The notes beneath the pieces are model-generated. The model had not been told where the DNA came from. It ran no database searches and was given only the letters and a program-made list of their open reading frames with translations. A DNA stretch of 63,895 bases, filler included, from Octopus bimaculoides (lineage: Eukaryota), in the NCBI RefSeq assembly GCF_001194135.2. It is 6 parts of 6 records of this genome, joined end to end, with 100 filler letters (N's around TTAATTAATTAA, not from the genome) between each part and the next. Parts side by side here need not be neighbours in the genome. Positions count along the whole stretch, not along the records: positions 30,298 to 36,302 come from NC_068996.1; 5 more parts are not named here. One strand, 5' to 3'. This document shows, one piece after another, positions 30,298 through 31,318 of this stretch (position 1 is the first letter of the stretch; each line of letters starts with the position of its first letter). The translations under genes and the position numbers were made by a program.

Positions 30298-31318
30298 CGG
30301 TCACAAGTTATGCAGATGATACAAAAGTTTCACAGGTAATACAGAACCCTGAAGACACTATGCACCTGCAATGTGAGCTGGATGAAATATACAAGTGGGC
30401 TGAAAAGAATAACATGCAGTTTAATGCTGAAAAGTTTCAAGCCTTGTGCTATCAGCATGCAAAACTAAATGCAGTGCTCATTAAATACACTGGACCTGGA
30501 GGGACTGCAATCCCAGAAGCAGAGACAGTGCGAGACCTGGGCATTTACATGAGTAATGATGCATCCTTTCATGTTCATGTTGCTAAATTGTCAATGAAAT
30601 GCAGGCGACTGACCGGATGGATTCTTACGACTTTAGAACAAGAGATCAGGAAACCATGATGGTGCTCTGGAGGACACTTGTTCTAAACCACTTTAACTAT
30701 TGCTCTCAGCTATGGTTACCAACCAGTGTCAAATTAATCTCAAAACTTGAGGCAATCCAAAGCTATACAAAGAAGATAGCCTCTATGCAACATATAAGCT
30801 ATTGGGAAAGACTCAAGAGATTAAGACTCTATTCCTTAGAGCGTAAATGAGAAAGATATGCCATAATATACATCAGGAAGATCCTCTAAGGAACTGTCCC
30901 AAACTTTGGCATCGAAAGTTACACAAATAAAAGAACTGGACGATATTGCATAGTGCCAAGGACTCCAAATTTGGCATCAAGATGTAGGACAAGATACTGC
31001 AATAGCCTGGGCTTCAGAGGTCCACAGCTCTTCAATATCCTCCTGAAGGACCTGAGAGACCTGCATGCGGTGGATGTAGGTGTCTTCAAGACAAGGCTGG
31101 ACCTCTTCCTGTCAGGTGTCCCAGATGAACCAACTTCATGGCAGGAGGTGCAGATGAGAGCAGCTGCATCAAACTCTCTCATGCACCAAATGTCAATTCC
31201 TGAAGTAAAATTCGTGAAGTAAAATTGTGTAGCAACACCAAATGGCAGTGCCCCAGCATGGCCACAGCTCATGAGCTGAAACTAGATAAAATGAAAAATG
31301 AAAATAAAATGAAAATGA
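30298..31318 (+). mobile_element. CR1-group LINE 3' part with intact 3' tail
   Basis: Reads YADDTK...WAEKNNMQFNAEKF...RDLGIYMS...YWERLKRLRLYSLERK*...GPQLFNIL...VPDEP, with frameshifts and stops. Ends in a hairpin and an (ATGAAAA)n-like tail. Confidence 0.9.

What the first reader, a model, noticed from the sequence alone, without database searches (positions are those of the whole stretch)
31244..31318. LINE-SINE shared 3' hairpin with compensatory stem changes
The CR1-group LINE ends GGCAGTGCCCCAGCATGGCCA-CAGCT catg AGCTG-AAAC. SINE family A ends GGCGGTGCTCCAGCATGGCCA-CAGTC aaa(t/a) GACTG-AAAC (6633-6646, 26462-26475, 36.57 kb, 38.73 kb). Other variants keep the pairing with different bases: CAGCC acgt GGCTG (57801-57814) and CAGC ttctt GCTG (48824-48836). 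A second, divergent CR1-group LINE has CATGGCC-TG-GACCA atctt TGGTC-GAAAC (42668-42682). Five stem sequences are thus bracketed by CATGGCC (CATGACC in the 57.8 kb copy) and GAAA(C). Established: CR1/L2-type RTs recognise a 3' stem-loop shared with partner SINEs. Inference: this is the cis recognition element of an octopus LINE/SINE system, conserved as structure across LINE families.
Basis: partly seen in the sequence, partly recalled or inferred. Interest (0 to 1): 0.75.

Follow-up and report, generated by a model that had tools for sequence, protein, structure and literature searches.

The report
Octopus LINE/SINE shared 3' two-hairpin tail
The sequence is the 3' end of a decayed octopus LINE retrotransposon, whose short tail folds into two small RNA hairpins followed by a simple repeat and is also carried by an abundant octopus SINE, a well-known way for SINEs to borrow a LINE's copying enzyme, so this is a real but ordinary example.

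Summary
Window 31265-31278 is a 5-bp/4-nt hairpin that lies 42 nt after the stop codon of a degraded LINE ORF2. It is followed by AAAC and an (AAAATG)n repeat.

That hairpin has a 4-bp stem, an R/G mismatch, a 4-bp stem that opens with an invariant G·U pair, and an NCCA loop.

Six related LINE copies carry the same module just after their ORF2 stop: two Argonauta families, three unassigned contigs and one 44%-identical family. The pairing is kept by compensatory changes in both hairpins.

It shares only this tail with the LINE. Its hairpin 2 (CAGUC/GACUG) differs from the window's (CAGCU/AGCUG) by two double changes. The model also found a tail-only LINE fragment there.

It made no hits in 549 kb of control DNA.

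The best explanation is a template-recognition module for the LINE reverse transcriptase. This rests on analogy with eel and zebrafish L2 and with bivalve CR1/SINE pairs and was not tested. CR1 clade membership and the SINE's exact partner LINE are not established. Verdict: a new member of a known kind, of modest interest.

The parts
30298..31222 (+). 3' part of a degraded LINE ORF2 (end of the RT domain plus the C-terminal domain), cut by the piece edge. The YADD motif is at 30309-30320. There is a frameshift near 30650, in-frame stops at 30848-30850 and 30887-30889, and the native stop TAA at 31220-31222.
   Evidence: Translations. Weak RVT_1 hit on the RT end. Homologues at 67% and 59% identity with E 1e-130 and 6.5e-117, one from Argonauta hians. 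Stop coordinates.
31223..31242 (+). Short 3' UTR linker between the stop codon and the conserved module. It may hold a small GUGU/ACAC hairpin, which is not conserved in the homologues.
   Evidence: Fold. Sequence similarity to the SINE and to the other LINE tails starts only at about 31241-31243.
31243..31264 (+). Hairpin 1: UGGC-A-GUGC CCCA GCAU-G-GCCA. It has two 4-bp stems separated by a 1x1 R/G mismatch. The inner stem opens with a G·U pair that is invariant in the 7 LINE tails. The loop is NCCA.
   Evidence: Folds. Four of its 8 pairs show double changes in the LINE tails: UA/GC, CG/UG/UA, UA/CG and GC/AU.
31265..31278 (+).
   Evidence: Folds. Alternative paired stems at the same position: CAGCC/GGCUG (L002, L001, L129, L126), CAGUC/GACUG (SINE in L131) and AGGGA/UCCCU (L130).
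31279..31282 (+). Single-stranded AAAC linker (GAAAC when the last stem base is included). It is kept in the octopod LINE and SINE tails and reads UCAAC in L130.
   Evidence: Alignment A2.
31283..31328 (+). Terminal A-rich tandem repeat of the LINE, (AAAATG)n-like, in place of a poly(A) tail.
   Evidence: TRF rows 31286/31288-31328. Related families end in (AAAACATT)n, (ATACAAG)n, (AGAGTAAA)n and (TCCAAGTAA)n. The unit number differs between two copies of one family.
34448..34552 (-). Fragment of the body of the partner SINE (family A), including its internal (TG)n repeat, with no tail. It shows that the LINE and the SINE coexist in this genome.
   Evidence: blastn of the O. vulgaris SINE copies against the piece: 77.9% over 104 nt, and 88% over 50 nt at 34503-34552.

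Best explanation
The region is the native 3' end of a non-LTR retrotransposon that is a dead copy. The family is of the APE endonuclease plus RT type, with a CR1/L2-style end.

Its last ~40 nt of unique sequence fold, on the sense RNA, into two adjacent hairpins followed by AAAC and a short tandem repeat. The same module ends a ~420-bp non-autonomous SINE in Octopus.

Proposed mechanism, inferred by analogy. The LINE ORF2 protein binds this 3' module on its own transcript and on SINE transcripts. It then starts target-primed reverse transcription within the terminal repeat. This explains three observations:
- the module is the part shared by the LINE and the SINE;
- tail-only, extremely 5'-truncated copies exist;
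- repeat-unit number varies between copies.

Hairpin 1 keeps an invariant G·U pair, an R/G mismatch and an NCCA loop, so it is the likelier specificity determinant. Hairpin 2 is kept as a stem only.

Shown here: the anatomy, the module's native position after ORF2, sharing with the SINE, compensatory pairing and the sense-strand bias. Inferred: protein binding and its role in mobilisation.
For: - LINE identity: YADD plus the RT C-terminus, with homologues down to E 1e-130. A related family's 991-aa ORF2 has Exo_endo_phos_2 and RVT_1 domains.
- Native position after the ORF2 stop in the window and six other LINE copies.
- The two-hairpin fold recurs in 6 of 7 LINE tails and in one SINE copy.
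- Covariation: 92.9% of cells paired and 5 double-change pairs against 1.4 expected, with 0 of 500 shuffles reaching this. Slid controls give 21-51% paired. The result holds with SINE copies and fragments added.
- A CG to UG to UA series at one hairpin 1 pair runs across the window, L129 and L001.
- The sense strand folds 2.2-6.5 kcal/mol better than the antisense strand in 7 of 7 tails. This fits conserved G·U pairs and hence an RNA-level structure.
- SINE sharing: model R1 finds two SINE tails and one tail-only LINE fragment in 24 kb of O. vulgaris. Outside simple repeats, SINE/LINE similarity in the piece is limited to the tail.
- Specificity: no hit at E<=1 in 549 kb. That set includes 80 contigs that each contain the 15-mer CCAGCATGRCCACAG. 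Pattern-selected bacterial hits score at most 16.8 bits, against at least 36 bits for the cephalopod tails.
- Tail-only copies are at L001 19086-19138 and L131 7288-7340. Repeat-number variation is seen.
- Precedents: ORF2 binds its cognate 3' stem-loop in zebrafish L2, and mutating the stem-loop abolishes retrotransposition (PMC4176376). A conserved CR1 hairpin plus microsatellite is known in amniotes (PMC4316615). Bivalve CR1-14_CGi and its SINEs share stem-loops with compensatory mutations (PMC4824008).
Against: - No functional data exist for this element.
- The comparative sample is small: 7 LINE tails, 2 decayed SINE copies and 2 fragments. Several sequences are related, which inflates the shuffle statistics.
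- The single-sequence fold is not significant (z = -1.9).
- Hairpin 2 and the terminal repeat differ between the window's LINE ((AAAATG)n) and the SINE (AAGAGTAA-like). This LINE family may therefore not mobilise that SINE. The L002-type tail ((AGAGTAAA)n, GGCGGTGC) is closer, but its hairpin 2 also differs.
- Four other homologous LINEs at 38-45% identity (L003, L004, L005, L127) lack the module.
- One copy (L128) has lost most of the pairing, as an old dead copy would.
- A tRNA origin of the SINE head was not detected by Rfam.
Confidence: 0.8

Rival explanations
1. The tail on the LINE copies is a secondary insertion, or a chimeric 3' transduction, of a SINE and is not part of the LINE.
For: LINE and SINE tails are 77-87% alike. 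Octopus genomes are dense in SINEs, at 11.6% of O. vulgaris (PMC13282606). Nested SINE insertions occur in this very piece, at 33846-34409.
Against: The module sits at a fixed place 12-26 nt after the ORF2 stop in five LINE copies from at least two octopod genera and in different LINE families. It is also present, farther from the stop, in a family of only 44% protein identity. No SINE body precedes it: BLAST similarity to the SINE starts at 31241. Each LINE family has its own hairpin 2 and its own terminal repeat. No SINE with this tail was found in 43 kb of Argonauta DNA that holds four LINE-derived tails.
Confidence: 0.04
2. The conservation reflects only recent common descent of primary sequence. 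The hairpins are incidental palindromes with no structural role.
For: Most positions of hairpin 1 are identical among the octopod copies. The single-sequence fold is not better than shuffles at the 5% level. Shuffle controls can be exceeded by related sequences alone, a caveat stated in the tool output.
Against: Where bases change, they change in pairs. Hairpin 2 is CAGCU/AGCUG, CAGCC/GGCUG, CAGUC/GACUG or AGGGA/UCCCU. The hairpin 1 inner stem is GUGC/GCAU or GCAC/GUGU, and the outer stem is GGC/GCC or GGU/ACC with a GGU/GCC intermediate. Loops vary freely in sequence and length while the stems stay paired. Slid-partner controls, which keep relatedness, drop to 21-51% paired.
Confidence: 0.08
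3. The structure is real but serves something other than RT template recognition. It could act in transcript 3'-end formation or stability, in nuclear export, or as a fold of the first-strand cDNA during integration.
For: No binding or mobilisation data exist for this element. Its position at the extreme 3' end would suit 3'-end processing or stability functions as well.
Against: The module is exactly the part that the SINE, an element with an unrelated body, has captured. That is expected for the part needed in trans by the LINE machinery. Tail-only copies show that reverse transcription starts downstream of it. The sense strand folds better than the antisense strand in 7 of 7 tails, and conserved G·U pairs argue against a cDNA-strand structure. 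In the experimentally studied L2 elements the equivalent stem-loop is bound by ORF2p and is required for retrotransposition.
Confidence: 0.08

Closest known systems
Bivalve CR1-14_CGi LINE with BivaV-SINE2 / BivaCORE-SINE1 (Nishihara et al. 2016, PMC4824008); bivalve SINE-LINE tail partnerships (PMC11481361)
   Same: Same phylum. A LINE 3' UTR end is shared with tRNA-type SINEs, it folds into conserved stem-loops, and compensatory mutations separate LINE from SINE. The shared length and identity here (~40-60 nt, 75-82% by BLAST) fall within the 35-61 bp and 72-95% reported for bivalves.
   Different: The host class differs (cephalopods), and the module described here has two specific hairpins. 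Whether the sequences are homologous to the oyster CR1 tail could not be checked, because no reference sequence was available. The 2024 study reassigns many bivalve partners to CR1-Zenon, so clade labels in this area are not settled.
Eel UnaL2/UnaSINE1 and zebrafish ZfL2-1/ZfL2-2 (L2 clade, 'stringent' LINEs; Kajikawa & Okada 2002; Hayashi et al. 2014, PMC4176376)
   Same: A 3' stem-loop followed by short tandem repeats. The module is shared by a LINE and a SINE. The model is that ORF2p recognises the stem generically and the loop specifically. That fits the contrast seen here between a sequence-constrained hairpin and a structure-only hairpin.
   Different: Those systems have one main stem-loop and have been tested experimentally. 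Here there are two adjacent hairpins, there is no assay, and clade membership is unknown.
Amniote CR1 3' UTR hairpin plus octamer microsatellite (Suh et al.; PMC4316615)
   Same: A conserved hairpin and a terminal microsatellite in place of poly(A), severe 5' truncation of copies, and a proposed RT recognition site.
   Different: No sequence similarity was shown. The repeat unit differs: (ATTCTRTG)n in birds, which is from my own knowledge, against (AAAATG)n and others here.
Octopus CORE-SINEs OR1/OR2 (Ohshima & Okada 1994, cited in PMC4824008 and PMC4758252)
   Same: The SINE found here has a CCTTGGGCAAGT...-type central segment, and it is an abundant Octopus SINE. It may be one of these published families.
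   Different: This was not tested.

Membership tests
LINE/SINE pair with a shared, structured 3' tail ('stringent' type, Okada model) | The LINE 3' UTR end and the SINE 3' end share sequence, and this is the only region they share | tested here: met
   blastn of the O. vulgaris SINE copies against the piece. Outside simple repeats, the only LINE match is SINE 376-436 to window 31241-31301 (74.6%) and SINE 345-381 to 31249-31285 (81.6%). R1 scores the SINE tails at 36-37 bits.
LINE/SINE pair with a shared, structured 3' tail ('stringent' type, Okada model) | The shared region forms stem-loop(s) that are maintained by compensatory changes | tested here: met
   (87-93% paired, 5-6 pairs with double changes, 0-1 of 500 shuffles reach this). 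Folds.
LINE/SINE pair with a shared, structured 3' tail ('stringent' type, Okada model) | The element ends in short tandem repeats rather than poly(A) | tested here: met
   (AAAATG)n at 31286-31328. Other units occur in related families, and copy number varies.
LINE/SINE pair with a shared, structured 3' tail ('stringent' type, Okada model) | LINE and SINE coexist in one genome | tested here: met
   L131 (O. vulgaris) holds a window-type LINE tail fragment and two SINE copies. The piece holds the LINE tail and a SINE body fragment.
LINE/SINE pair with a shared, structured 3' tail ('stringent' type, Okada model) | The SINE has a Pol III (tRNA-derived) head | tested here: inconclusive
   No tRNA hit from Rfam at E<=10 on the two decayed copies. 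A box-B-like GGTTCTGTGTTCAGTCCCAC was seen only by eye.
LINE/SINE pair with a shared, structured 3' tail ('stringent' type, Okada model) | The cognate ORF2p binds the tail, and the tail is required for mobilisation of the LINE and SINE | not testable with these tools
   Needs binding and retrotransposition assays.
CR1-clade LINE | ORF2 with an APE-type endonuclease and an RT domain | tested here: met
   The window holds only the RT end. A 991-aa relative (P0215, the L130 family) has Exo_endo_phos_2 plus RVT_1. The neighbouring gene in L127 has Exo_endo_phos. This feature is shared with many other clades.
CR1-clade LINE | Phylogenetic placement of the RT within the CR1 clade, as opposed to L2, Rex1, CR1-Zenon, RTE and others | not tested
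   No reference RT set was available, and database hits carry no clade names.
CR1-clade LINE | 3' UTR hairpin plus microsatellite end, with frequent extreme 5' truncation | tested here: met
   The feature is also found in L2-clade elements, so it is not diagnostic.

The most novel reading that the evidence does not exclude
The two-hairpin module (GGC-R-GUGC NCCA GCAU-G-GCC plus a free-sequence second stem) may be an old recognition element. It is kept across LINE lineages that have diverged to 44% ORF2 identity, possibly beyond octopods. Several LINE subfamilies with slightly different second hairpins could then cross-mobilise the same SINE. Such a shared 'master key' would help explain why SINEs expanded so strongly in octopuses in particular.
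Probability: 0.2. Interest if true: 0.5.

Novelty: new member of a known kind. Interest (0 to 1): 0.3.

Why it matters
SINEs make up roughly a tenth of Octopus genomes. In the latest O. vulgaris annotation nearly all of the recently active SINE families are "unclassified", with no LINE partner assigned.

A defined 3' module shared with a LINE lineage gives a concrete handle for three tasks:
- classifying those SINEs by tail;
- naming their likely drivers;
- designing binding or retrotransposition tests.

Conceptually it adds a cephalopod example to a mechanism already established in fish and inferred in birds and bivalves. It does not change that picture.

Tried and rejected
- Rfam over the whole piece gave no family at the tail. 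The mir-297 and mir-1277 hits are microsatellite artefacts, and the SCARNA7 hit is far below threshold.
- A JGI metagenome scan with the 15-mer CCAGCATGRCCACAG returned only chance bacterial matches. These were reused as a negative control.
- A longer pattern found nothing in IMG/VR. In GTDB genomes it found 8 chance-level sites scoring at most 16.8 bits.
- Protein-guided locus searches in viral and prokaryotic collections found no LINE relatives.
- More distant LINE homologues (L003, L004, L005, L127; 38-45% identity) have other tails and no R1 hit. The module is therefore not universal in this LINE group.
- No SINE with this tail was found in 43 kb of Argonauta DNA or in the piece itself.
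- An empty-site test against the O. bimaculoides orthologous locus failed. The SINE-bearing 4.1-kb block is rearranged or absent there, and the site of the LINE fragment falls in an assembly gap.
- A full-text search for the tail sequence and for Octopus SINE/LINE partner descriptions found no prior description in the held library. The Albertin 2015 paper and the 1994 Ohshima & Okada paper were not available.
- Cluster look-ups gave no organism names for the unassigned contigs.
- The idea that the LINE fragment at L131 7288-7348 is the tail of the adjacent SINE-like repeat was rejected. That repeat runs on the opposite strand.

Full report
**What is in the piece**

Window 30298-31222 is the 3' part of a LINE ORF2. 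One frame reads VTSYADDTK..., the RT 'YADD' motif at 30309-20. After a frameshift near 30650 a second frame continues through a well conserved C-terminal domain (...YCSQLW...YSLERK*ERYAIIY...NSLGFRGPQLFN...VPDEPT...SNSL...). The native stop is at 31220-22. There are two in-frame stops, at 30848 and 30887, so this is a dead copy that is cut at the piece edge.

Pfam sees only the RT end. The protein has clear homologues:
- 67% identity to an unassigned ENA contig (P0001, locus L002);
- 59% and 57% identity to two Argonauta hians proteins (P0002 in L001; P0138 in L126).

It also belongs to a very large family of marine-animal RT proteins, with 4134 hits at E<=1e-20. A 991-aa member of a related family has an APE-type endonuclease domain and RVT_1.

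**The observation**

The quoted tail is present as written. After the stop come 20 nt of linker and then these parts:
- UGGC-A-GUGC CCCA GCAU-G-GCCA (31243-31264);
- CAGCU CAUG AGCUG (31265-31278);
- AAAC (31279-31282);
- an (AAAATG)n-like array reaching 31328.

RNAfold gives two adjacent hairpins, not one. On this single sequence the fold is unremarkable: z = -1.9, with 10 of 200 shuffles as good. Nothing can be concluded from the window alone.

**Comparative evidence from LINEs**

I fetched the DNA downstream of six homologous ORF2s. The same module follows the stop codon in each.

| Locus | Source | Tail | Terminal repeat |
|---|---|---|---|
| L002 | unassigned, 67% | GGCGGTGCCCCAGCATGGCCA CAGCC tgcg GGCTG AAAC | (AGAGTAAA)n |
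| L001 | Argonauta | GGTGGTGCACCAGCATGACCA CAGCC gactc GGCTG AAAC | (AAAACATT)n |
| L129 | Argonauta-like | GGT...GCC (a U·G intermediate) | not recorded |
| L126 | second Argonauta family | GGGC...GCCC, CAGCC ggcaat GGCTG AAAC | (ATACAAG)n |
| L128 | 50% identity | decayed | not recorded |
| L130 | 44% identity, unknown host | GGC-G-GCAC CCCA GUGU-G-GCC, AGGGA gga UCCCU, UCAAC | (TCCAAGTAA)n |

Both hairpins therefore covary.
- In hairpin 1 the outer pairs run CG, UG, UA and UA/GC. The inner stem GUGC/GCAU becomes GCAC/GUGU. The G·U pair and the NCCA loop stay fixed.
- In hairpin 2 the stem is replaced wholesale, and the loop varies from 3 to 6 nt.

On the 7-tail alignment 92.9% of cells pair and 5 of 12 pairs have double changes. 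Shuffles give 1.4 on average and 0 of 500 reach 5. Slid partners give 21-51% pairing.

The sense strand folds 2.2-6.5 kcal/mol better than the antisense strand in 7 of 7 tails, as expected for an RNA structure with G·U pairs.

Four other homologues at 38-45% identity have different tails. The module is a property of one LINE lineage, not of the whole group.

**The SINE**

No SINE with this tail is in the piece or in 43 kb of Argonauta DNA. To obtain Octopus DNA I fetched the rhodopsin locus of O. vulgaris (L131, 24 kb). A covariance model built from the LINE tails (R1) finds three sites there.

- Two sites are the ends of ~420-bp elements that are about 85% alike. Each has a head, an internal (TA/TG)n repeat and a body ending ...GGGTCGAGTTGCTCGAYTAAA. 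Then comes GGCGGTGCTCCAGCATGGCCACAGTCaaatGACTGAAAC plus an AAGAGTAA-like repeat.
- The third site is a tail-only fragment of the window's own LINE family: TGCCCCAGCATGGCCACAGCTcgtaAGCTGAAAC plus (AAATG)n.

Hairpin 2 of the SINE (CAGUC/GACUG) differs from that of the window (CAGCU/AGCUG) by two fully compensated pairs. BLAST similarity between the SINE and the piece's LINE is confined to 31241-31301. The piece also holds a tail-less fragment of the SINE body at 34448-34552 on the minus strand. With the SINE copies and the fragments added, the pair statistics hold.

**Specificity**

R1 gives no hit at E<=1 in 549 kb of other DNA. That set includes 80 metagenome contigs selected for the 15-mer CCAGCATGRCCACAG. 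Bacterial sites selected by a 20-base pattern score at most 16.8 bits, whereas the cephalopod tails score at least 36 bits, apart from a 23.5-bit hit to a 30-nt fragment.

**Is the tail native to the LINE?**

Yes. The module has a fixed position just after the ORF2 stop in several families and two genera. No SINE body sequence lies upstream of it. Each family has its own hairpin 2 and its own terminal repeat. Tail-only copies occur at L001 19086-19138 and L131 7288-7340. A 5'-truncated copy with more repeat units than its full-length relative is what target-primed reverse transcription starting in the terminal repeat would leave.

**Mechanism**

The best-supported reading is the established one for 'stringent' LINEs. 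ORF2p recognises a structured 3' module on its own RNA, and SINEs that have captured the module are mobilised in trans.
- For zebrafish and eel L2 this has been shown experimentally, with the stem recognised generically and the loop specifically.
- A conserved hairpin plus microsatellite is known for amniote CR1.
- In bivalves a CR1 LINE and two SINEs share stem-loops with compensatory mutations, and many such partnerships have since been listed.

By that analogy, hairpin 1 is the likelier specificity determinant. It keeps a fixed loop, G·U pair and mismatch. Hairpin 2 would be a structural element. This is inference, and nothing here tests binding.

**Caveats**

- The sample is small and partly related.
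- The SINE copies are decayed, and a tRNA origin of the SINE head was not detected.
- The window's LINE family differs from the SINE in hairpin 2 and in the terminal repeat. The actual driver is probably a sister subfamily, and the L002-type tail is closer.
- The 'CR1' label is untested.
- An empty-site comparison with O. bimaculoides was not informative.

**Novelty**

The kind of element is long known, including in molluscs. I found no description of this particular octopus module or partnership in the searchable literature. The 1994 octopus SINE paper, Repbase and Dfam could not be consulted. I rate it a new member of a known kind, of modest interest. Its main use would be to classify the many unassigned octopus SINEs.

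Noticed in passing
window 33827-34428: Nested SINE insertions of other families. An outer ~211-bp element (33846-33851 plus 34205-34409, ending ...AAAATTTGAAACC) is flanked by a 19-bp target-site duplication AATATTTRCATGCTATTAT. It is interrupted by a 341-bp CORE-like SINE (33852-34192, ending ...CGACGGAATGCCAGT) that has its own 12-bp duplication TATTATGGTGGA. 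Neither element carries the two-hairpin tail.
   Followed up: partly
window 32000-32077: Three copies of a 26-mer made of telomere-type CCCTAA units (GTAACCCTAACCCTAACCCTAAAACC) lie directly beside the assembly gap 32089-32965. This is either an interstitial telomere-like block or a scaffold-end artefact.
   Followed up: no
window 33314-33744; 35944-36018; 36216-36301: A long compound tetranucleotide array (GATG/GACG/GACA/GATA)n and (TGTA)n/(TA)n arrays. The Rfam mir-297, mir-1277 and mir-3149 matches at 35951-36021 and 36232-36302 are artefacts of these repeats.
   Followed up: yes
L126 15000-15660 and six other sites in L001/L126 (Argonauta hians): A 96-nt core of the Octopus SINE (GTGGCACCTTGGGCAAGT...GGTAGACGGAAACTGAAAGAAGCCCGTC) occurs 7 times in 43 kb of Argonauta DNA at 81-88% identity, but with a different 3' part. 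Some copies form ~366-bp tandem units. The same SINE core is thus combined with different tails in different octopods.
   Followed up: partly
L131 18771-22874 versus L132 18928-19202: The 4.1-kb O. vulgaris block downstream of the rhodopsin gene that holds both SINE copies has no collinear counterpart in O. bimaculoides, where the interval is 274 bp and partly inverted. The O. bimaculoides 24-kb locus has no hit to the tail model at all.
   Followed up: partly
L131 7349-7500 (+ strand element) and L132 18950-19160: Another abundant octopus SINE-like repeat (...TTCAAATTCCGCCGAGGTCGAC...GGCCTTGTGCCTAGAGTAGAAAGGAT followed by (ATT)n) lies back to back with the LINE tail fragment. The outer element at window 34205-34409 is related to it.
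   Followed up: no
L004 2160-2215; L127 11230-11345: More distant LINE relatives end in other hairpin-plus-repeat designs. Examples are CGCG...CGCG GAAAC followed by (AACCTCAAAT)n, and several small hairpins followed by (GGATTCAGTAA)n. The general architecture seems wider than this particular module.
   Followed up: no
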